Shown piece by piece: positions 23,082 to 57,074 of a stretch of DNA of 64,000 bases. Location: positions 197,548,897-197,612,896 of the forward strand of contig NC_085845.1 in assembly GCF_035594765.1 (NCBI RefSeq), in the 5' to 3' direction. The number at the start of each line of letters is the position of its first letter. The first letter of the stretch is position 1. The translations under genes were made by a program, and so were the position numbers. Origin of the DNA: Anolis carolinensis. Its lineage: Eukaryota. The notes under the pieces were generated by a model. The model saw nothing but the letters and a program-made list of their open reading frames with translations. It was not told where the DNA came from and did not search any database.

Positions 23082-23360
23082 ATGTTGCTGGCGTTGCTTC
23101 TCATCAGCTGGTACGGCGCTCCAGGAAACGGCGAGGTGGTGACCTCTTTTGAGGACACCTGTCCCCACTTCTTCTTCAGAGGGGTCCCTCCAAGTCTTGG
23201 GCTTGAGCCTTCGCGTCCTGCTCGGATTTGCCAGCGTTACAAGAACCAGTATCGTTACGCCACGCTGTACGACAAAGACAACCGCATCCCGGTGTACTCG
23301 GCCTACATCTACAACCCTGGGACGGCGAAGAGACCAAGTACTTGGATGGTTGAACCCCAG
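23082..23360 (+). CDS. ENDOD1-like secreted DNA/RNA non-specific endonuclease, coding exon 1
   Basis: Signal peptide MLLALLLISWYGAPGNG, then EVV..CPHFFF..ICQRYKNQYRYATLYDKDNRIPVYSAY..WMVEPQ; donor CAG|GTAAGA. Confidence 0.9.
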
Positions 23361-23510
23361 GTAAGAAAAGAAGCAAGAGTTCCAGAGTGTTCTGGCTCAA
23401 CACCTCTCTCTATTGTTCATTTATGTGCATATTAATTGTGTCAGAACAAGATGTATCACTATTTGAGGCAAGTGCTGCCATTGACATCTTCTTGCCCCAT
23501 TATATATATA

Positions 23511-23992
23511 CTAGCTGTGCCCGGCCACGCGTTGCTGTGGCGAAGTATGGTGGTATGGGAAATAAAGTATTGAGGTAGTTAAGGTAAAGGGTAAACGTTT
23601 TCCCCTGACATTAAGTCCATTATAAATGGGTTATATAGCTGTGTGGAAGGGCCTTGAATCTACACTGGCATATAACCCAGTTAAAATCAGATAATCTATA
23701 TTTTATAGGCAGTGTGGAAGAGGCCTAAGTGAGGCCTAACTCTGCCTGTCCCCTGGACTGAGTGGGTTGCTAGGAGACCACGTAGGCGGAGCTTAGCCTT
23801 CTAACTGGCAGCAATGGGATAAAAACAATTATTCCTCTCCCTCTAATTAGGACTTTATTTTTCTTTTCTTTTTGTTGTATGAATGTAGAGGCATGGATGA
23901 GGGGTTGTGCTGCCAAGTTTAGTGTTTCTGGAATGTGTGGTTCTATTGTTTTGTCCTAGGCTGAAATTTCATTACCCTTTTATATATATAGA
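23511..23992 (-). mobile_element. Non-autonomous Helitron
   Basis: The minus strand starts TC, ends with the hairpin GCCACAGC-AAC-GCGTGGC followed by CTAG, and is inserted between A and T with no TSD. Confidence 0.85.
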
Positions 23993-23994
23993 TA

Positions 23995-24525
23995 ATATTT
24001 ATTTATTTTCATTCATTTAAGTATACCTACATTGCAAGTGTTTGTTGCATACAGTGCAATACTTTCATCTACTAGTCTTTCATAATCATTTCTCAGACAA
24101 TATATTTTCAATAAGGGGTCACAGTTTTCTATTTGAGTAGTACATATAAAAATATGATAAATTCCAAATTAATATCAGTTTCCTCCCTGCCTTCAGTCTA
24201 TTAGCTTCCTCTATGTACATTTTTAGATTAATTTTACATTGAGATGTTGGATCATTGGTTGCCATTCATTAACAAAGTTCTCTAAAGGTTCTCCTCTTAA
24301 CTGTATCGTTATTTTGTCCATCATCAGCAACTCTATAATATATTGTTCCAGTTCTGCTAAGGGAGGTACCTCTGAGGTTTTCCAATATCTAGCGTATACT
24401 ATCCGAGCTGCCACTGTCACGTAAAAAAAAAATCTTCCATATTTCCTTTCCAATTCTTCTTCGGGCATGTTCAAAGGGTACATTTGTGGTGTCATTTTAA
24501 AATTTGTATTTAATATCTTTTCTAG
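23995..24525 (-). mobile_element. L1-clade LINE 3' fragment
   Basis: ORF2 C-terminal peptide FYVTVAARIVYARYWK...ELLMMDKIT...W, followed by an A-rich tail. Confidence 0.7.
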
Positions 24526-25258
24526 ATGTACATGAATCTGTTTCCGGTAGTTGTTACTTCTTGCCCCATTATAATGTTAATTGCCCCCTTTGTTACATTG
24601 CCTACAATATGTAAATGTGTTGTTGAAGGCATTCATGGCCAGAATCACTGGGTTGCTGTGAGCTTCATTGGGCTGTATGTCCATGTCCCAGTAGAATTAT
24701 TTCCTGATGTTTCGCCTGCATCTGTGGCAAGAATCCTCAGAGGTTTGTTCAGATGTCTGTTGGAAATGAGGCGAGTGGAGTGTATTTATGTCTGTGAAAT
24801 ATCCAGGGTGGGAGAAAGAACCCTTGTCTGTTTGAAGCAAATGTGGATGTTGCAATTATCCTTCACTCCCTCCATGTGGAGACCTAATCTGATATCATGG
24901 GAAACCTCCCCATCTTCTGGGCTGGGCTGTGGCGCAGGCTGGAAAGCAAGCCAGCTGCAACAAATCACTCTGACCAAGAGGTCATGAGTTCGAGGCCAGC
25001 CCGAGCCTGCGTCTTGTCTCTGTCTCTGTTCTATGTTATGGCATTGAATGTTTGCCTTTATGTGTGCAATGTGAGAAGGTGAGAAGGGCAGAATATAAAT
25101 GCTGTAAATAAATAAATAAATAAATAAATAAATTAGCAAGCTTGATTGTTAATTGCAAATAATATCTACCTGCTGTTAGGAATGGTGGGAGTTGAAGTCC
25201 AAAACACATAGAGGGCCAAAGTTTGCCCATGCCTGATCTAATCCCCTTTTCTCTACAG

Positions 25259-25804
25259 CTTGTTGATTCAAGCTTCCAAACTGAAATGGAATCGGAAGGA
25301 TCTTTCCTATATGACAGCAGTTCCAAAGAAGAGGCGCTTCGTAACAGCCAGGCCGTTTTGCAAGATTACAAGAACCTGACCGGCCTCAACCGGGGGCACC
25401 TGAACCCCAACGGGCACCAGCCCGACAAGGACGCCAAGGCCTCCACTTTCAGCCTGACCAACATCGTGCCCCAGAACATCAAGCTGAACGGTGGCACCTG
25501 GAACAACTACGAGCAGACAACCATGGCGAGGAACACGGAGGGGTGCAGTGAAACCTTTGCCGTGGTGGGAGCCGTGCCGGGGAACAACTACGTTTCCGGA
25601 GGAAGGGTCAACAAGCCCAGCTACATGTGGTCGGCTGCCTGTTGCGTCGTAGATAACAATCACATGAGATCCTGGGCCATCATTGCCAGGAATGACGAGA
25701 ATGTAGTCCAGACTCTCACTTTGGGGCAGTTGGAGGACAAGCTGGCCGAATTCTATAATCGGAATTCCATCCTCCTCTTTGACGATGACTGTCCGCGCGA
25801 ATAA
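25259..25804 (+). CDS. ENDOD1-like nuclease, coding exon 2 (catalytic); total ~274 aa
   Basis: SQAVLQDY..NRGHLNP..ASTFSLTNIVPQNIKLNGGTWNNYE..VVGAVPG..RVNKPSYMWSAACC; acceptor TACAG|CTT; stop TAA at 25802. Confidence 0.92.
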   Translation, partial: LVDSSFQTEMESEGSFLYDSSSKEEALRNSQAVLQDYKNLTGLNRGHLNPNGHQPDKDAKASTFSLTNIVPQNIKLNGGTWNNYEQTTMARNTEGCSETFAVVGAVPGNNYVSGGRVNKPSYMWSAACCVVDNNHMRSWAIIARNDENVVQTLTLGQLEDKLAEFYNRNSILLFDDDCPRE

Positions 25805-27915: not shown

Positions 27916-29849
27916 CCTATTGTGTAACCCCATCGAGCACAGGTAGCCACATGGAGGCAAACACCTGGAGGGATGAAGTTTGCCAATGCCTGGTTTAAAA
28001 CATAGAATGGTCTGAGTGCCCCCATTGACTTGAGAACCCCCAGCTTCCACCGATTATGCTGCCATCCAAACCCCTTCTTAGATGAGATTCAGGACTTCTT
28101 GACATTCACAAAATCTTCCATAAAACCATGTGGCACATATCAGTCAAGAGAGATTTCTCATTCCTTTTTTATTGATGCAAAGATATTGCTTCAATAGACT
28201 GAGGCCCCATCTATACTGGTCATTTAATGCAGTTCGAAGCTAGCTTGAAACTGGAGTAGGCAGACAGTAAATTCCCATGAAAGTGTGTGAAATGCACACA
28301 AACTTTCTGTGATTTGTGTAATCACCATCCAAGTCTCAAACTAGTTCCAGGATTTCCTATGTCACCACCTGCACAGCAAAATCGCTTTCTTTGATACTGG
28401 TTTTAAACTGCATTAAATAATCAGTGTAGAAGGATCATGAATAGAGAAAAGTGTTATTTGGAGAAGTCTGGGTGTGCACCGAACTCTGGCAGTTTGTATT
28501 ATTAATGACTTACCTCACAGGGAAATTGTGAATCCAAGTTGAATAGAGATCATAAAACTATTTGAAAATGCGGATGCATCACTCCATGGTGAGGGTCTGT
28601 AATGTCTTGCTTATCTTTCAAACCTTAGAGTGCAAACATTTTTTTACATCAGGAAAGCATACAGAATCCAATTCATTTCACTTTGTGGGAATTATTTATT
28701 TGTATTATTCATCAGCATATATCAGGCATGGGCAAACTTTGGCCCTCCAGGTGTTTTGGACTACAACTCCCACAATTCCTAACAGCCTACCGGCTGTGGG
28801 AGTTGCAGTCCAAAACACCTGGAGGGCCAAAATTTGCCCATGCCTGACATATAGGTTGCTTTATAACTACAAAAACAAAACAGCCAGCCCTGCAAAAGGC
28901 ATATAATCGAATACACACAGAGAGGGAAAGGAAGGACTAATACAATTGTAAAACTCTGCACTGTGATTGTCTGTGATTGTCAATATAATGTAATGCAAAT
29001 AACAAAATTATGAAAGATTATAAAGCAATATGAAACAGAAATCGACAAATCCTTGGAAAGTGAGAAGGTTTTTGACTGAGATTCAGAAGTAGTAAGGGAC
29101 GGCACAGTCTGCAGATGTTCAGGGAAGAAATTTCAGGAGTTTGGAGCAACAAATCAGCTCTTGAACTGTAGGCGTGGGGCATAAATCCTATTTCTTCTAT
29201 GCTGTATTCCTATACATCCATCTATGTTACATAACTTTACATAAAATCCAGATCACACCTTCATTAGGGAGGGAACTTGCACGGTGTGTTAATTTGAGGT
29301 TGCGCTACAACTTTGGAGACCAGGGTTTGAATCCTAGCTCAGCCATGGAAATGCACTGGGTGATCTTGGGCAAGTCACACTCTCTCAGCCTCAGAGAGAG
29401 GCAAGGCAAATACACTGATAGATCATCTTAGGGTGGTCTTAGGGGGTTGGACTGGATGGCCCATGAGGTCTCTTCCAACTCTACTATTCTATGATTCTAT
29501 AGGGTCACCATAAGTCGGGAACAACTTGAAGGTACACAACAACAAGGTCTTCAGAGTTCTATGAAACTCTTAAGCTAATCAACTAAATCAATAGAGAGCT
29601 GGGCAGCCAGATCTCAGGCTCTGAACCCTCCGATTCTCAAGGCAAAGTGGAGGAATCTAAGGGTGAGAGCACTGCTTTGCAAATTTGTGTAGATATATAT
29701 ATTTCCCCATTTTCATAGTGGACTAAATCCTATGGCTAGTCATGATCACTGAATCAGATTTCCCTATATGTCAACTCACTTGCCCAAGGGTTATGGTGTG
29801 TTTTCCGGGCTGTATGGCCATGTTCCAGATGTATTATTTCCTGACATTT

Positions 29850-30759: not shown

Positions 30760-31669
30760 ATTTCCTGACATTTCACACACATCTATGGCAGGCATCCTCA
30801 GAGTATGCCTGCCATAGATGTGGGCGAAATGTCAGGAGAGAATGCTTCTGGAACATGGTCATACAGCCCAGAAAACACACAACAACCCTGTGATTCCAGA
30901 CATGAAAGCCTTCGACATCACTTGCCCAAGGTCACCCAGTGGGTTTCCATGGCCAAATAGGGATTGGAATGAATCCCTATTCATTCATGATTTACCCACT
31001 AAAAGATTTGCAACCCACTTTTCAATCAAAGTCTCAAAGGGCCCTTCCACACATATCCCAGAATATCAAAGCAGAAAATCCCATAGTATCTGCCTTGAAC
31101 TGGATTATCCGAGTCCACACTGCCATATATTCCAGTTCAAAGCAGATAATATGGGATTTTATTCAGCTGTGTGGAAGGGGCCTAAGGCAGCAAATAAAAC
31201 ATTTATAACTGTACAACACATACAATCTTTAAACAAGTATGGGAAGAAGAAATAGAGCAACAGAATCAGGGGAAAGAGAAAAAAAATTTCCAGCAAACTC
31301 TTGCGGAGAGGGCTTCCAGGCAAGCATCAATTAGTAAAATAAACATGTTTAAAGAATAAGGTCAATACGAGTGGTGCCATTCCACAGCCATCCACTATAA
31401 TTCAGATCCAAGTCCCTGAGATCTTAATGTAGACATGTGGCCCCAAATGAGAATCCTTGGACATCCAAATATCTTCTTCTGATTTTGCCGGCAAGTTCAT
31501 CCAATTAGGAATTGGAGCCTTTCACCAATCTTCAGGTGCCTTTATTTACCTCGGAGAAATATATTAAAATACAGGATTTTTAACAGACTGTGATAGCAGG
31601 CAGTCTATGCACAAAGATGAAGCTGATGTATGCTATTACTACTCACCACACATTTCTTATGAGGATTCC

Positions 31670-31716
31670 TTATAAAAGGATGGCAACAATCATTACAGCA
31701 ATAATCAACACAGTTG
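31670..31716 (-). CDS. IL2RA: IL2RA transmembrane exon (exon 31647-31716), truncated by an in-frame TAA
   Basis: TTTCAG|..ATVLIIAVMIVAILL*GILIRNV..|GTGAGT; phase 1 start fits the upstream exons. Confidence 0.7.
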
Positions 31717-31849
31717 CTGAAAGAAACAAAAAAGTAAACTTGAAAATAAATAGCTGAATCAAAAGATTACATCTCTGCTCAATATGCTGAATATATTTAT
31801 TATTAAACTGATATGTTTTCCAAACAACAATCATGACCAACAACAATTA

Positions 31850-32432
31850 CAGTGGTTTGCTGTGAGTTTTCTGGGCTATATGCCCATGTTCCAGAAGCAT
31901 TTTCTCCTGATGTTTCACCCACATCTATGGTAAGCATCCTCAGAGGTTGTGAGGTCTGTTGGAAACTAAGCAAGTGGGGTTTATATATCTCTGGAAAGTC
32001 CAAGGTAGGAGAAATAACTCTTGTCTGCTTGAGGCAAGTGTGAATGTTGTAATTGGCCAGCTTGATTAGCATTCAGAAAACAGGGGAATTCCAGGCAAGA
32101 AACAATCAGGGCCAGCAAACACTCCCAAGACAGGATTCCCCCAGGCAGGAAGCAGATAGGCTTTGAAGCTGCAAGACTATTCAATGCTAATCAAGGTGGC
32201 CAATTGCAATATTCACACTTGCGTCCAACAGACAAGAGTTCTTTCTCTCACCCTGGACATTATTCCACAGATATATAAACCCCACTTGCCTAGTATCCAA
32301 CAGACCTCACAACTTCTGAGGATGCCTGCCATAGATGTGGGTGAAACATCAGGAGAGAATGCTTCTGGAACATGAACATACAGCCCGGAAAACTTACAGC
32401 AACCCAGTGAGTCTGGCCATGAAGGCCTTCGA
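31850..32432. mobile_element. Penelope inverted pair
   Basis: Same pseudo-LTR family as 12694-13570, present in both orientations. Confidence 0.8.
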
Positions 32433-32751: not shown

Positions 32752-32835
32752 CTTCCATGACTTGCTCTAATATGCTTTGGGAGCCATTGTCTCTTTGTTT
32801 ATAATCTTCTGTTGAAGAGCTTTTGGAAGAAGGAG
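32752..32835 (-). CDS. IL2RA: IL2RA stalk exon 5 (paralogue of linker exon 3)
   Basis: TTAG|APSSKSSSTEDYKQRDNGSQSILEQVME|GTAACA; 84 nt, phase 1 to 1. Confidence 0.65.
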
Positions 32836-33888: not shown

Positions 33889-34128
33889 CTGAGCCAAGGG
33901 AGGAGTTTGGTATCCCTTCGGTAACAACACTACTGCTGTCATTGGCGCAGCGCAGAGATAAGCGGGACCACACTCCTTTCCCCTTGAAATCCTGGCAAGT
34001 GCTGTTTCCAGAGATGGGGGACCAGGCGTGGTATCCATCCAGGCATCTGTACTGCAGTGTTTGCCCCACAAGATACTTAGCCACCTTGACCGTGGCATGT
34101 TTGAGGGGCCTGGGGAGTCTGCATCCAT
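33889..34128 (-). CDS. IL2RA: IL2RA exon 4, sushi domain 2
   Basis: DGCRLPRPLKHATVKVAKYLVGQTLQYRCLDGY..GNSTC..VWSRLSLRC; four-Cys/Trp sushi pattern with the IL2RA-type VGQxLxYxC motif; 240 nt, phase 1 to 1. Confidence 0.88.
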
Positions 34129-34280
34129 CTGTAAGGTCTTGGAAGCAGAGAATCATGGAGTTAGAAGACATTCCCAAAGAATTTCAGCCCAACCTTTAAA
34201 GGAGCTATCCAAGGTGCTGAGCCTATTTGTGGAACTTGATTCAGTCTCTCAGGGTACATTTACACTGTAGAATTATTATT

Positions 34281-35363: not shown

Positions 35364-35465
35364 CTTTTATAATGTGGTGGGATGTTATTTGGGAGCTGTT
35401 CGAACTTTCTTCACATGCTTCAGTTGAGAGCTTCTGGGAAGCGCGAGAAGTCAGCTCAGAAATGG
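35364..35465 (-). CDS. IL2RA: IL2RA exon 3, inter-sushi linker
   Basis: CACAG|AISELTSRASQKLSTEACEESSNSSQITSHHIIK|GTAGGA; 102 nt, phase 1 to 1. Confidence 0.75.
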
Positions 35466-35689
35466 CTGTGCAGAAACATAATTATTTAAGTGAGAAATAT
35501 ATATATACACACCTACACACTGCAGCTGACACACGAATACAGGCATGGGCAAACTTGGGCCCTCCAGGTGTTTTGGACTTCAACTCCCACAATTCCTAAC
35601 AGCTGGCAGTCCAAAACACCTGGAGGGCCAAAATGTGGAGGTCTGGCTCTGAAACCTCTATTCAATTTCCCAGAAATGCTGTTTCCTAC

Positions 35690-35878
35690 CTGTGCAATTG
35701 GGGGGAAACCGGCAGGTCCACTGAGCTTGGGTGGATCGCTTCTCGCAGGTCATCCGGTTGCTTCTTCCTCCCAGCCTCTTGTAGCCAAGCTCACAGTCAT
35801 AACGGACCACTGTCCCCAAGACGTACCACTCGGCAAAATACTCGGCAAACTCAATTGTCTGGGGAAAGGGGCATTCTC
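35690..35878 (-). CDS. IL2RA: IL2RA exon 2, sushi domain 1 (cytokine binding)
   Basis: GECPFPQTIEFAEYFAEWYVLGTVVRYDCELGYKRLGGRSNRMTC..W..C; IL2RA/IL15RA-family RYxCxxGYKR motif; 189 nt, phase 1 to 1. Confidence 0.88.
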
Positions 35879-41332: not shown

Positions 41333-43349
41333 TAATGCACTCTTACAGTCAAGACATTCTTCCTAATTCAGGTGGAATCTCAATTCTTGTGCTTGAATCC
41401 ATTGGTTTGTGTTCCCTATTCTCTGGAATAGGAGGAAACAAGCTCATGCCCATCTTCTACATGGCATCCTTTTAAATCTTTAAATACAGCTATCATATCA
41501 CCTTTTCGTCTTCCCTAAACTAAAAATGCCCTGGTTTGTAAGGCATTCCTTGCGCAGATACATTTTCATGCCTTTTGATATATTGATCGAGATCTCTCTG
41601 AACATGTTCTAGCTTGTCATTATCCTTCTTGAATTGTGGACATAGTCTTCCATGTGGACATAGTATTATGATTCCACTGCCTTGGCTGCATCCTATAGAA
41701 TTTTGGAATTTGCAGTTCAGCATACTTTCCAACTGTTCTGATATGTCAGAGACAGTACTGATTAAAGCGCTGTTATCCAATTCTCTCAACTGCTTTTAAG
41801 GCATCCTACTTTTTCTCCTCTCCTTCTCCACTTATGGGACAAAGAAAGCATCATTTGGAGACATATACTGTATTTTTTCTAAGTCATGGGTGTGTTACCA
41901 TATATATATACAGTAGAGTCTCGCTTATCCAACGTAAATGGGCCGGCAGAACATTGGATAAGTGAATATGTTGGATAACAAGGAGAGATTAAGGAAAAGC
42001 CTATTAAACATTAAATTAGGTTATGATTTTACAAATTAAGCACCAAAACATCATGTTATACAACAAATTTGACAGAAAAAGTAGTTCAATACACAGTAGT
42101 GCTATGTAGTAATTACTGTATTTACGAATTTATCACCAAAATACCATGATATGTTGAAAATATTGACTACAAAAATGCGTTGGATAATCCAGAACGTTGG
42201 ATAAGCGAGTGTTGGATAAGTGAGACTCTACTGTATATATGAATACAACTTTACCCTTGTTGGTGGCACTGAAATGAGTGTGTATCTTATAATCAACGAC
42301 ATCTCAGAATTGAAGAAATACGGTCAAAGGAATCAACTTTCTATTCCAGGTGCAAATACAGTAGTCTCTCACTTACCCAACATCTGCTTATCCAACATTC
42401 TGGATTATCCAACGCAGTTTGCCGCTCACCCCAACCCACAGCTGTTTCTCTAAACAGCAAGGATTGAACTTTTTATGGATTTAATTTCTGGCAATGTTGC
42501 TACTGTACGTTCATTTTATGCAATTCTATCTTTATTTGTAGCCAATTTGTTAGTAGCCAATGTTATTGTAGTCAATGTTTTCAATACAATAGAGTCTCAC
42601 TTATCCAACATTCGCTTATCCAACATTCCGGATTATCCAAAGCATTTTTGTAGTCAGTGTTTTCAATACATCATGATATTGTGGTGCTAAATTTGTAACT
42701 ACAGTAATTACTACGTAGCATTACTGCATATTGAACTTCTTTTTCTGTCAAATTTGTTGTATAACATGATGTTTTGGTGCTTAATTTGTAAAATTATAAC
42801 GTAATTTGACATTCAATAGGCTTTTCCTTAATCCTTACTTATCATCCAACATTTTCGCTTATCCAACGTTCTGCCAGCCCGTTTATGTTGGATAAGTGAG
42901 ACTCTACTGTACATACATACATCCCTGCATGACAAAATTGTAAACCCAATTAACATCACATTGAAACAATTGTCCATTCACAACAGAAAGTCAGTGATAA
43001 GCATGCAAAAATATTAAATAAAGCACCCACCCAAAAAGTATTCGAAATCTATTTTACAATGAATTGCCCTGAACCACAGCACCAGAAAACAATAGCAGAA
43101 ATGCCTACATAATCCTACAAAGCTACAAATCTGAGCATCCTATAGTTTGGATTCAAAGCAGCATTATGGGACATATGTTGCATGTAGATCTGGAACCAAT
43201 GCCTTCAGAAATGTTATTTAAATGAGGTGGAAATTTGGCTGATTCATCCTTGATAGTTTGTGCTCTTTATGAGTTGTCATTGACACTGGCAGTCCCTCCT
43301 TTCCTTACCATAAATCACCAAACAGCAACCCAAAGATTTTGCTGCTTAC

Positions 43350-43425
43350 CTTTCCCAGCCCCGAATGTGGTCTGGATCGTTCCCCACATCAAGAATAATC
43401 CAAATCCAATGCAGAAGTTGCCCAT
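43350..43425 (-). CDS. IL2RA: IL2RA exon 1, signal peptide
   Basis: MGNFCIGFGLFLMWGTIQTTFGAGK, with LMWG as in the mammalian IL2RA leader. Phase-1 donor AAAG|GTAAGC. ETS site CAGGAAGT ~225 bp upstream. Confidence 0.8.
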
Positions 43426-55990: not shown

Positions 55991-56600
55991 CCTCACTGCT
56001 CCTCCTTTATCCTCGCTTTATCTCCGCCAAGCCTCCGCTGCGGCCTAGCTTGACTCGACGCGCTTCCCCGCAAGCCCCGCGACGGACAACAGACTCCACG
56101 GAGCCGCCGTGCCAGACAGGCGGACTGGCGCGGTCTGAAGGGAAAGGGGGTTGCTTCCTCTAGGCAAAGAAGGCGGGGCGACGGTCTTAGCCAATCACAG
56201 ACACCGTAGCATGCGCTATAGCCAATAGGAGATGAAGGAAAAGAGAACGGCGCTCTGTGTAGCTGACAGGGCATATATTGACGCTTCTTTTTACCAATCA
56301 CGCGCAAGGAGGAGGAGGAGATGTTTACTTTGAAGCATTGGAAATGTGGGCAGAGGCGGGGCTTTTTGGTGATCGACCAGACTGCTGCCCAATCCACGTC
56401 GTGGGCGTGACGCTTCGATTGTCGGAACAGGCCTAAGGTCTAACCATTCCGGTGACGGAGAGGCGGAGTTCGGAATTGAGTGACAAGGCGGTGAGCCAGT
56501 CGGAGAAGGGGAGAAAGGGGGAGAGGCGCCGGAAACGGAAGAAGGGATGTCCATCCGGGAGCTGGAGCTCGGTGGGGACGCGCAGGGCGGCCGGAGCAGC
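55991..56600. promoter_or_regulatory. Bidirectional CpG-island promoter of CGGBP1 (non-coding exon 1, donor at 55991) and ZNF654
   Basis: CpG-rich, with four CCAAT boxes (~56191, 56222, 56294, 56389), GC boxes and an NRF1-like GCATGCGC. Head-to-head genes as in mammals. Confidence 0.85.
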
Positions 56601-56717
56601 ATGGCGGAAGACGAGAGCGACCAGGAATCGGAGCGGCTGGGCGAGGAGCTCCAGGCCTTGGCCGGGCCACGCCTCCCCTCTGCCAGCAGCCAGCACTACT
56701 GCTACCGCTTCTGCCAG
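56601..56717 (+). CDS. ZNF654: ZNF654 first coding exon (later exons lie outside the window)
   Basis: MAEDESDQESERLGEEL...SSQHYCYRFCQ|GTGAGC matches human MAEEESDQEAERLGEEL...SSRDYCRRFCQ; head-to-head with CGGBP1. Confidence 0.9.
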
Positions 56718-57074
56718 GTGAGCGGCCTCCCCCAGCCACACGCGCACTTATCGCGCAACTGCCCCGCTTTAGAGGCCGGCTGTCACTTGGGGGAGTTTCC
56801 TGGCTGTGTGTCCTGGCACCACTTCACCTGTCACGGCCTCCATGTCTCCTCCCTCTGTAGGCCTTCCCCAGTCTCTTGCCTGGAAGGAGGCGGTTGAAGA
56901 GGTGTCAAACCGAATTAAAACCCCAGTGCAGATGCTCCCCCCCTTGTCATAGCCATTTTTCCCTGAACCTCTCTTCGGTCGGAATTCAAAATGGCCTGCG
57001 CAGATTATGTATTTCAGCAAGGACAAATGTATGACGCTACACTGAGGAGGAAATAAATTGAATGCATTTTTTAT

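What the first reader, a model, noticed from the sequence alone, without database searches (positions are those of the whole stretch)
31647..31716. CD25 (IL2RA) with a stop codon inside the transmembrane exon: possible GPI-anchored or soluble receptor
Seen: the exon has strong splice sites and reads ATVLIIAVMIVAILL-TAA(31672-31670)-GILIRNV. The hydrophobic run continues past the stop to a basic residue. Established: human IL2RA has ...LLLSGLTW at this place, so TCA>TAA is a one-step change, and CD25 needs no cytoplasmic tail to capture IL-2. Inference: the ~245-aa product ends D-N-G-S, a 9-residue spacer and a 15-residue hydrophobic tail, which is the layout of a GPI attachment signal. The stop lies only 23 nt before the donor, so it may escape NMD if the next exon is the last. 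Alternatives are a shed decoy, a null allele or a sequencing error.
Basis: partly seen in the sequence, partly recalled or inferred. Interest (0 to 1): 0.78.

Follow-up and report, generated by a model that had tools for sequence, protein, structure and literature searches.

The report
Lizard CD25 naturally lacks cytoplasmic tail
The stop codon inside the membrane-anchor exon of the green anole's IL-2 receptor alpha gene (CD25) is real, already annotated and shared by lizards and snakes, so squamate CD25 normally ends in a 15-residue greasy tail that may be a lipid (GPI) anchor signal, though nobody has tested this.

Summary
On the minus strand, a 70-nt exon (31716-31647) with good splice sites reads a 15-residue hydrophobic run, then TAA (31672-31670), 23 nt before the donor. 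The window is Anolis carolinensis, and the RefSeq IL2RA protein (248 aa) maps to it exactly and ends at this TAA.

It is not an error, a null allele or an anole novelty.
- Contigs from two independent DNA studies show no substitution in the exon.
- The same codon is TAA in Sceloporus, Elgaria and Thamnophis, and TGA in spliced mRNA contigs of a scincoid-like lizard. Those contigs also show the donor 23 nt downstream in use.
- Podarcis has GAA there and still gains no charged tail.
- Predicted bird CD25 proteins also end in the hydrophobic run. Alligator, turtles and monotremes keep a transmembrane segment plus a 42-47-residue tail.

So the tail was lost at least twice in sauropsids.

The C-terminus has the layout of a GPI-attachment signal: small residues D-N-G-S, a 9-residue spacer and a 15-residue tail. 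However, the tail is very hydrophobic, no trained predictor was available, and a tail-less transmembrane anchor is nearly as plausible. I found no anole RNA evidence.

Interest is moderate.

The parts
43348..43425 (-). IL2RA exon 1: start codon and signal peptide (residues 1-26 of P0003)
   Evidence: Exact mapping of P0003 on the window. CDS span. The 3' boundary is approximate, within 1-2 nt.
35690..35878 (-). Exon 2: sushi domain 1
   Evidence: Splice-site scan. Pfam Sushi E=1.7e-6. PDB IL2RA E~2e-6. P0003 mapping.
35364..35467 (-). Exon 3: inter-sushi linker
   Evidence: P0003 residues 89-122 map here. Donor at 35364. The acceptor is approximate.
33889..34137 (-). Exon 4: sushi domain 2 plus the start of the stalk
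   Evidence: Splice scan. Pfam Sushi E=5e-7. Best PDB matches are all human IL2RA domain 2, E=7e-9.
32752..32835 (-). Exon 5: Ser/Thr-rich stalk. It ends in phase 1 and holds the candidate omega region D-N-G-S (32791-32780) and the 9-residue spacer.
   Evidence: Sequence and splice sites. Translation. P0003 mapping. Rule check.
31673..31716 (-). Coding part of exon 6: the last two bases of the Ala codon plus 14 hydrophobic codons, giving the 15-residue C-terminal hydrophobic tail
   Evidence: Identical to the end of RefSeq P0003.
31670..31672 (-). TAA, the natural stop codon of squamate IL2RA
   Evidence: No substitution in two independent DNA runs. Same codon is TAA in Sceloporus, Elgaria and Thamnophis, TGA in L008/L009 mRNA, and GAA in Podarcis.
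31647..31669 (-). 23 nt of exon 6 after the stop. This is 3' UTR and a relic of the end of the ancestral membrane span plus its basic residue. It is conserved among squamates without a codon-position signature.
   Evidence: Alignment A2. In Sceloporus the first 15 post-stop nt are identical, within a 23-nt identical block that spans the stop. Codon-position tally by hand in the full report.
31641..31646 (-). GTGAGT donor after exon 6
   Evidence: In the scincoid-like mRNA contigs the homologous junction, 23 nt after the stop, joins two alternative downstream exons. Podarcis splices from it to a short last exon.
28990..29165 (-). Candidate downstream 3'-UTR exon. This block is conserved with Sceloporus and begins at a shared tacag acceptor. 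It is unconfirmed.
   Evidence: blastn blocks. Alignment A3 at 79% identity. Substitutions are spread evenly over codon positions (17/14/13 of 40 each), so it is non-coding. No RNA evidence.

Best explanation
The TAA is the genuine and ancient stop codon of squamate IL2RA. The gene makes a normal CD25 ectodomain: a signal peptide, two sushi domains and a Ser/Thr-rich stalk. The protein then ends, with no cytoplasmic residue, in a 15-residue hydrophobic peptide.

Most probably this C-terminus acts as a GPI-attachment signal. In that case the ER transamidase would cut at one of the small residues in D-N-G-S, remove the spacer and tail, and attach a lipid anchor. CD25 would then sit in the outer leaflet, where it captures IL-2 for the signalling beta and gamma chains and could be shed by phospholipases.

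The 23 nt after the stop, and the donor, are a relic of the old membrane-span exon. They now serve as 3' UTR spliced to downstream non-coding exon(s), so the mRNA escapes nonsense-mediated decay.

Shown: the stop, its conservation, the tail-less product, and use of the donor in relatives' mRNA. Inferred: GPI processing, surface expression and IL-2 binding in lizards. About 0.95 of my confidence goes to 'genuine conserved stop and tail-less protein'. About 0.45-0.5 goes to GPI as the mode of anchoring.
For: - The stop is present in the window.
- RefSeq P0003 ends at it.
- Two independent DNA studies show no substitution in the exon.
- The same codon is a stop in Sceloporus, Elgaria and Thamnophis DNA and in L008/L009 mRNA.
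- Protein models of Rhineura, Paroedura and Hemicordylus also end inside the hydrophobic run.
- The hydrophobic character and 15-residue length of the tail are kept while its sequence changes freely. The tail is therefore translated and under selection.
- The layout fits the GPI rule: omega-type triplets DNG, NGS or SQS, a spacer of 7-10 residues, a 15-residue tail and no cytosolic residue.
- Podarcis, which has Glu in place of the stop, reads a K- and E-interrupted hydrophobic stretch that is a poor membrane span but an acceptable GPI tail.
- L008 and L009 diverge exactly 23 nt after the stop, so the donor is used.
- Precedent: a stop truncating the membrane span makes FcgRIIIB GPI-anchored (PMC6786274).
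- Chicken CD25 is a surface marker stained by several antibodies (PMC11156169). A galliform mRNA-derived protein, possibly chicken, has only a 7-residue extension beyond the hydrophobic run.
Against: - No GPI predictor or experiment was available, and the omega rule is permissive in Ser/Gly-rich stalks.
- The Thamnophis and Hemicordylus models have no rule-fitting omega site.
- The anole tail is very hydrophobic (mean Kyte-Doolittle 3.24), more like a true membrane span than the marginally hydrophobic tails I recall for classical GPI signals (memory, not tested).
- No anole RNA run was found, so exon inclusion and the 3' end in the anole rest on RefSeq and on conservation.
- The two unplaced 1-nt gaps in the X3/X9 contigs.
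Confidence: 0.5

Rival explanations
1. Tail-less type I membrane protein. The hydrophobic run, perhaps extended by the preceding V-M-E, is integrated by the translocon as a short membrane span and is never cleaved. CD25 is then held in the membrane by a span with no cytosolic residues.
For: The tail is very hydrophobic and rich in Ile, Leu and Val (KD 3.24). The snake and Hemicordylus models lack a rule-fitting omega site. A galliform mRNA-derived protein (P0200) extends 7 residues past the hydrophobic run and looks like a span plus a stub.
Against: Fifteen to 18 residues is short for a plasma-membrane span, and there is no basic stop-transfer residue. The Podarcis version is interrupted by K and E, and bird versions by two prolines, which suit a GPI tail better than a helix. 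The stop is held at the same codon across squamates, which suggests that tail length matters.
Confidence: 0.33
2. The hydrophobic end does not anchor the protein stably. The product is mainly secreted as a soluble IL-2-binding decoy, or is largely degraded in the ER.
For: Several database models in relatives end in retained introns before the tail, which would give soluble forms: A. sagrei P0002, and isoforms in Hemicordylus, Manacus and Phasianus.
Against: The hydrophobic tail is conserved in length and character across squamates and birds, which a useless tail would not be. Chicken CD25 is a cell-surface marker (PMC11156169). The intron-reading models are not conserved between A. sagrei and A. 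carolinensis.
Confidence: 0.08
3. Stop-codon readthrough. A fraction of ribosomes read through the TAA and make a second isoform with a complete membrane span (hydrophobic residues plus Arg) and a short tail from the next exon.
For: The 23 nt after the stop are conserved and still read as hydrophobic residues followed by a basic one in Anolis, Sceloporus, Elgaria and L008/L009. The frame stays open for 37 codons in L009 and about 47-49 codons in the candidate next exon of Anolis and Sceloporus.
Against: UAA or UGA followed by G is an efficient termination context (established knowledge). The snake has a second in-frame stop 5 codons later, and L008 closes the frame at the junction. In the post-stop codons, third positions vary least (hand tally). 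The candidate next exon shows 17/14/13 substitutions by codon position, so it has no coding signature. The L009 extension has no relative in the other loci.
Confidence: 0.05
4. Assembly or sequencing error, or a null or pseudogene allele of this individual.
For: None beyond the prior. Two 1-nt gaps in the X3/X9 contigs are unplaced.
Against: No substitution in contigs of two other DNA studies. The same stop is present in four other squamate sequences. All other exons are intact and match RefSeq exactly.
Confidence: 0.02

Closest known systems
Mammalian IL-2 receptor alpha chain (CD25, IL2RA)
   Same: Signal peptide, two sushi domains on separate phase 1-1 exons, a linker exon, a Ser/Thr stalk and a small hydrophobic-anchor exon. 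Sushi 2 matches human IL2RA domain 2 best among solved structures. Databases name the protein IL2RA.
   Different: Therian CD25 has a full membrane span plus a basic tail of about 10-13 residues (P0038, P0055, P0070). A PKC-delta/SHIP1/SHP1 function is reported for that tail (bioRxiv 10.1101/2023.03.13.532151). The anole protein stops after 15 hydrophobic residues. The gene also sits next to an Endonuclease_NS gene and NUDT9-like exons, whereas the mammalian gene sits next to IL15RA. Chicken CD25 is likewise not adjacent to IL15RA (PMC9680057).
FcgRIIIB (CD16b) versus FcgRIIIA
   Same: An immune receptor whose relative is a transmembrane protein. A stop codon truncates the membrane-span and tail region, and the product is GPI-anchored (PMC6786274). 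This is the best precedent for the proposed mechanism.
   Different: GPI anchoring of CD16b is shown by experiment and also depends on a Ser/Phe difference near the omega site. It arose in a recent primate gene duplicate. Here a single-copy gene carries the change across a whole order, and anchoring is untested.
CNTFR-alpha and other GPI-anchored ligand-capturing alpha chains (from memory, not tested here)
   Same: A non-signalling alpha chain that captures a cytokine and hands it to signalling partners. No cytoplasmic domain is needed.
   Different: A different fold (a cytokine-receptor-homology domain, not sushi). It is unrelated in sequence.
Alligator, turtle and monotreme IL2RA
   Same: The same gene family and domain order. 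Each major group forms one clade in the tree. The alligator anchor exon aligns with the anole exon.
   Different: They have a sense codon where squamates have the stop, a complete membrane span, and a 42-47-residue cytoplasmic tail with a shared acidic C-terminal motif.

Membership tests
IL2RA / CD25 | Two sushi (CCP) domains, each on its own exon, separated by a linker exon | tested here: met
   Pfam Sushi hits on both exons. Exon map.
IL2RA / CD25 | Closer in sequence to IL2RA than to IL15RA or complement regulators | tested here: met
   For sushi 2, the nine best PDB sequences are all human IL2RA (E 7e-9 to 2e-7), while IL15RA scores 0.02. Sushi 1 is less decisive: DAF scores higher through summed repeats, IL2RA gives 2e-6 and IL15RA 2e-5.
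IL2RA / CD25 | One orthologous lineage with tetrapod IL2RA | tested here: inconclusive
   Squamates, birds, mammals, turtles and amphibians each form one clade, but the deep nodes are unresolved. Synteny differs from mammals (PMC9680057).
IL2RA / CD25 | Binds IL-2 and raises the affinity of the beta/gamma receptor | not testable with these tools
   Needs binding assays with anole IL-2.
GPI-anchored protein | N-terminal signal peptide | tested here: met
   By inspection only: the first 26 residues of P0003 hold a hydrophobic core followed by small residues. No predictor was run.
GPI-anchored protein | C-terminal hydrophobic stretch of about 12-20 residues with nothing after it | tested here: met
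   15 uncharged residues, then the stop.
GPI-anchored protein | Omega site: small residues at omega and omega+2, followed by a polar spacer of about 5-10 residues | tested here: inconclusive
   A home-made rule finds DNG, NGS and SQS with spacers of 7-10 in the anole, and candidates in most relatives. It finds none in the Thamnophis and Hemicordylus models. The rule is permissive, and no trained predictor was available.
GPI-anchored protein | Released by PI-PLC, or carries a lipid anchor | not testable with these tools
   Needs an experiment.
NMD-immune premature-looking stop | Stop lies less than about 50-55 nt upstream of the last exon junction | tested here: met
   23 nt in Anolis, Sceloporus and Elgaria, and 23 nt to the junction seen in L008/L009 mRNA. 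Whether this is the last junction in the anole is not known.

The most novel reading that the evidence does not exclude
CD25 of squamates, and probably of most birds, is a GPI-anchored protein. It would be the first lipid-anchored alpha chain in the IL-2/IL-15 receptor family. It would have arisen at least twice by a stop codon at nearly the same codon of the membrane-span exon, while crocodilians, turtles and monotremes kept a long ancestral cytoplasmic tail. If so, the tail-dependent functions described for mammalian CD25 would be absent in these animals.
Probability: 0.4. Interest if true: 0.6.

Novelty: new variant of a known kind. Interest (0 to 1): 0.45.

Why it matters
CD25 is the textbook marker of activated and regulatory T cells and is a drug target. 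Comparative immunology usually assumes that it is a transmembrane protein with a short tail.

The data here show three fates for the ancestral amniote tail of about 45 residues. It survives in crocodilians, turtles and monotremes. It was cut to about 13 residues in therian mammals. It was removed entirely in squamates and, according to gene models, in birds.

If the remaining hydrophobic end is a GPI signal, lizard and bird CD25 would sit in lipid rafts. It could be shed by phospholipases instead of proteases. It could not carry out the tail-phosphorylation feedback reported for mammalian B cells.

The question is easy to test: PI-PLC treatment of transfected cells, or of bird lymphocytes for which antibodies exist.

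For the scan, the result also shows that a stop inside a membrane-span exon is not necessarily a defect.

Tried and rejected
1. RNA evidence in the anole. The run search returned only DNA-like contig sets. The one small run guessed to be RNA (X23) covered only repeats. Organism B (X21) gave no usable piece over the exon.

2. The other C-terminus of the older anole model P0004 is not an alternative exon. It is read-through of the stalk exon's donor (32749-32705).

3. The second open frame of the exon (Cys-rich reading) is open in all squamates. This follows from T at the second codon position of hydrophobic codons, which puts T at the third position of that frame. I rejected it as a signal.

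4. Homology of the L008/L009 downstream exons to the anole, Sceloporus, Elgaria, Thamnophis or Podarcis loci: only simple repeats matched.

5. Coding signature in the conserved block downstream (about 29165-28990): none.

6. Scan for another hydrophobic exon between the stalk exon and the next gene: only low-complexity or repeat-derived stretches.

7. Literature: no paper in the held library mentions GPI anchoring or tail loss of sauropsid CD25. The original chicken CD25 cloning paper is not in the library.

8. DNA of Paroedura, Rhineura and A. sagrei could not be fetched. The divergent Pogona C-terminus was left unresolved.

9. I did not submit a joined spliced anole model to any tool. Exons were searched by reference, and database protein ids were used afterwards.

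Full report
**The observation.** On the minus strand, a pyrimidine-rich acceptor ending in cag is followed by a 70-nt exon (31716-31647) and a GTGAGT donor. Of the three frames, one has several stops and one is open with a Cys-rich reading. The third reads 14 hydrophobic codons, TAA at 31672-31670, then G-I-L-I-R-N-V. The upstream exon (32835-32752) ends in phase 1 with a G. The spliced frame is therefore the one with the stop, and the junction codon is GCA (Ala). That upstream exon encodes D-N-G-S (32791-32780) and a 9-residue spacer.

**What gene it is.** Two minus-strand exons carry sushi domains: 35878-35690 and 34137-33889. For the second exon, the nine best matches among solved structures are all human IL-2R alpha domain 2 (E=7e-9), while IL-15R alpha scores 0.02. 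The first exon matches IL-2R alpha at 2e-6.

I searched exon by exon, by reference. That search found database proteins named IL2RA from Anolis carolinensis and A. sagrei. A second search, with the A. sagrei protein id as query, found the RefSeq A. carolinensis protein P0003 (248 aa) and a Sceloporus undulatus protein. P0003 maps to the window without a mismatch, in six exons from the ATG at 43425. Its last residues are the 15-residue hydrophobic run, so public annotation already ends the CDS at this TAA. The window is from the chromosome-level green anole assembly. An older anole model with a different end simply reads through the donor of the stalk exon.

**Is the stop real?**
- Contigs of two DNA runs from different studies (2019 and 2017) span 31161-31901. 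Their only substitution is at 31756, in the intron.
- Those contigs also carry two single-base gaps somewhere in 31161-31755 that the tool did not list. That stretch holds A8 and A6 runs, which are the likely places. I could not prove that the gaps lie outside the exon.
- The comparative evidence is stronger. In Sceloporus DNA the orthologous exon is also 70 nt, with TAA at the same codon and 23 identical bases around and after it.
- Elgaria and Thamnophis DNA have TAA at the same codon.
- Two spliced mRNA contigs from public RNA runs encode a protein that groups with Hemicordylus, so the source is probably a scincoid lizard. They have TGA at that codon.
- Podarcis has GAA (Glu) there, reads to the end of the exon and adds six residues from a further exon. 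It still has no charged tail.
- Protein models of Rhineura, Paroedura and Hemicordylus also end inside the hydrophobic run.

The stop is therefore an old squamate character. It is not an error, a null allele or an anole novelty.

**Transcript structure.** The two mRNA contigs are identical for 338 nt before and 29 nt from the stop region, then diverge exactly 23 nt after the stop. This is the position of the donor in Anolis, Sceloporus and Elgaria. The donor is therefore used, and it joins alternative downstream exons. A stop 23 nt before an exon junction lies within the zone that normally escapes nonsense-mediated decay (established rule).

In the anole I could not get RNA evidence. The run search gave only DNA-like contig sets, and the small run guessed to be RNA covered only repeats. 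A block at about 29165-28990 is conserved with Sceloporus and begins at a shared acceptor-like tacag. It is a candidate 3'-UTR exon. Its substitutions fall evenly on the three codon positions, so it is not coding.

**Wider distribution.** A profile search of 1.84 billion proteins, followed by name look-ups, gave this picture:
- Predicted bird CD25 proteins, from ratites to passerines, also end in a hydrophobic run. In pheasant DNA the TGA aligns with the squamate stop and overlaps a GTGAGT. One galliform mRNA-derived protein reads seven residues further.
- Alligator, turtles and monotremes have a full membrane span and a tail of 42-47 residues with a shared acidic C-terminal motif.
- Therian mammals have about 10-13 basic residues, and caecilians a short basic tail.
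- In the alligator, the aligned exon has a sense codon where squamates stop.

A maximum-likelihood tree recovers squamates, birds, mammals, turtles and amphibians each as one clade, with the deep nodes unresolved. On the accepted species tree, the tail was lost at least twice, once in squamates and once in birds.

**How it probably works.** The ectodomain is intact, and the tail is conserved in length and hydrophobic character while its sequence drifts. It is therefore translated and functional.

The C-terminus has the canonical layout of a GPI-attachment signal. There are small residues (DNG, NGS or SQS as omega triplets), a polar spacer of 7-10 residues, 15 hydrophobic residues and nothing cytosolic. 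The Podarcis and bird versions, interrupted by K/E or by prolines, look more like GPI tails than helices. A direct precedent exists: the stop that truncates the membrane span of FcgRIIIB, which is GPI-anchored, unlike its relative FcgRIIIA (PMC6786274).

Against this:
- My rule check is crude.
- The snake and Hemicordylus models lack a fitting omega site.
- The anole tail is as hydrophobic as a true span (mean Kyte-Doolittle 3.24).

A tail-less, uncleaved short membrane span is therefore a serious rival. I put GPI at about 0.45-0.5, a tail-less span at about 0.33, a secreted or unstable product at about 0.08, readthrough at about 0.05, and an artefact or null allele at about 0.02.

**An unexplained detail.** The 23 nt after the stop are conserved about as well as the coding part, whereas the downstream intron and the more distant upstream intron do not align. 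They still spell hydrophobic residues plus a basic one in four lineages. This could suggest readthrough. However:
- The stop is followed by G, a strong termination context.
- The snake has a second stop five codons on, and L008 closes the frame at the junction.
- Among the seven post-stop codons in five species, first positions vary in 6, second in 5 and third in 3 (hand tally). This is the opposite of a coding pattern.

A splicing or UTR element seems more likely.

**Comparison with what is known, and novelty.** The gene model and its stop are already in RefSeq. I found no paper in the held library that notes the loss of the CD25 tail in squamates or birds, or that tests GPI anchoring. The original chicken cloning paper is not held.

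Chicken CD25 is an established surface marker (PMC11156169), and its gene is not adjacent to IL15RA (PMC9680057). This agrees with the anole locus, where the neighbours are an Endonuclease_NS gene and NUDT9-like exons. In mammals, the CD25 tail has been reported to recruit SHIP1 and SHP1 after PKC-delta phosphorylation in B cells (bioRxiv 10.1101/2023.03.13.532151). Animals without the tail cannot use that mechanism through CD25.

**Verdict.** This is a lineage-wide variant of a known receptor, of moderate interest, with a simple decisive experiment.

Noticed in passing
window 31647-31669 (-); L001 25895-25917; L004 21548-21570; L008 784-806: The 23 nt after the stop are conserved among squamates and still read as hydrophobic residues plus Arg or Lys, yet third codon positions vary least. 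It may be a splicing or UTR element. Readthrough is unlikely but not excluded.
   Followed up: partly
window ~23082-25804 (+): A gene for a 274-aa Endonuclease_NS-family protein lies tail-to-tail downstream of IL2RA. The same neighbour is found in Sceloporus (L001) and Podarcis (L005), so this synteny is conserved in squamates and differs from the mammalian IL2RA-IL15RA arrangement.
   Followed up: partly
window 6071-8001 (-): ORFs with NUDT9-type Nudix sequences (for example a [16 protein letters not shown]-like stretch) appear here.
   Followed up: no
proteins P0192, P0017, P0182, P0233 (alligator, turtles, platypus): The long cytoplasmic tails of crocodilian, turtle and monotreme IL2RA share an acidic C-terminal motif (Glu-rich, then Q-R/T-x-K-L). 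This suggests an ancestral functional tail that was lost in squamates and birds and replaced by a short basic one in therians.
   Followed up: partly
L006 20505-20515 (Phasianus): In the pheasant, the TGA that ends the CD25 model overlaps a perfect GTGAGT. A galliform mRNA-derived protein (P0200) has TGG there and reads seven residues further, so the transcript is not spliced at that site in that species.
   Followed up: partly
window 33889 donor; protein P0002 (A. sagrei): The A. sagrei RefSeq-type model ends four codons into the intron after the sushi-2 exon, which would be a soluble form. The same read-through in A. carolinensis gives a long unrelated peptide, so this may be a model artefact or a species-specific isoform.
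   Followed up: no
window, many places (e.g. 25039-25365, 28782-28979, 12159-12347, 4691-4978): A repeated element whose translation contains MGKL(W/R)PSRCFGLQLPQFLTA-like peptides is scattered on both strands. Read laying shows very high contig depth over these stretches, so it is an abundant anole interspersed repeat.
   Followed up: no
protein P0175 (Pogona vitticeps): The Pogona IL2RA model ends differently: a hydrophobic run followed by R-I-A-T-G-R-A-C. Either the acrodont lineage changed the end again or the model uses another exon.
   Followed up: no
window 56000-57000: This is the only GC-rich stretch of the window (GC 0.51 against about 0.40 elsewhere), with long ORFs in several frames. 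It looks like a CpG-island-type promoter or first exon of another gene upstream of IL2RA.
   Followed up: no
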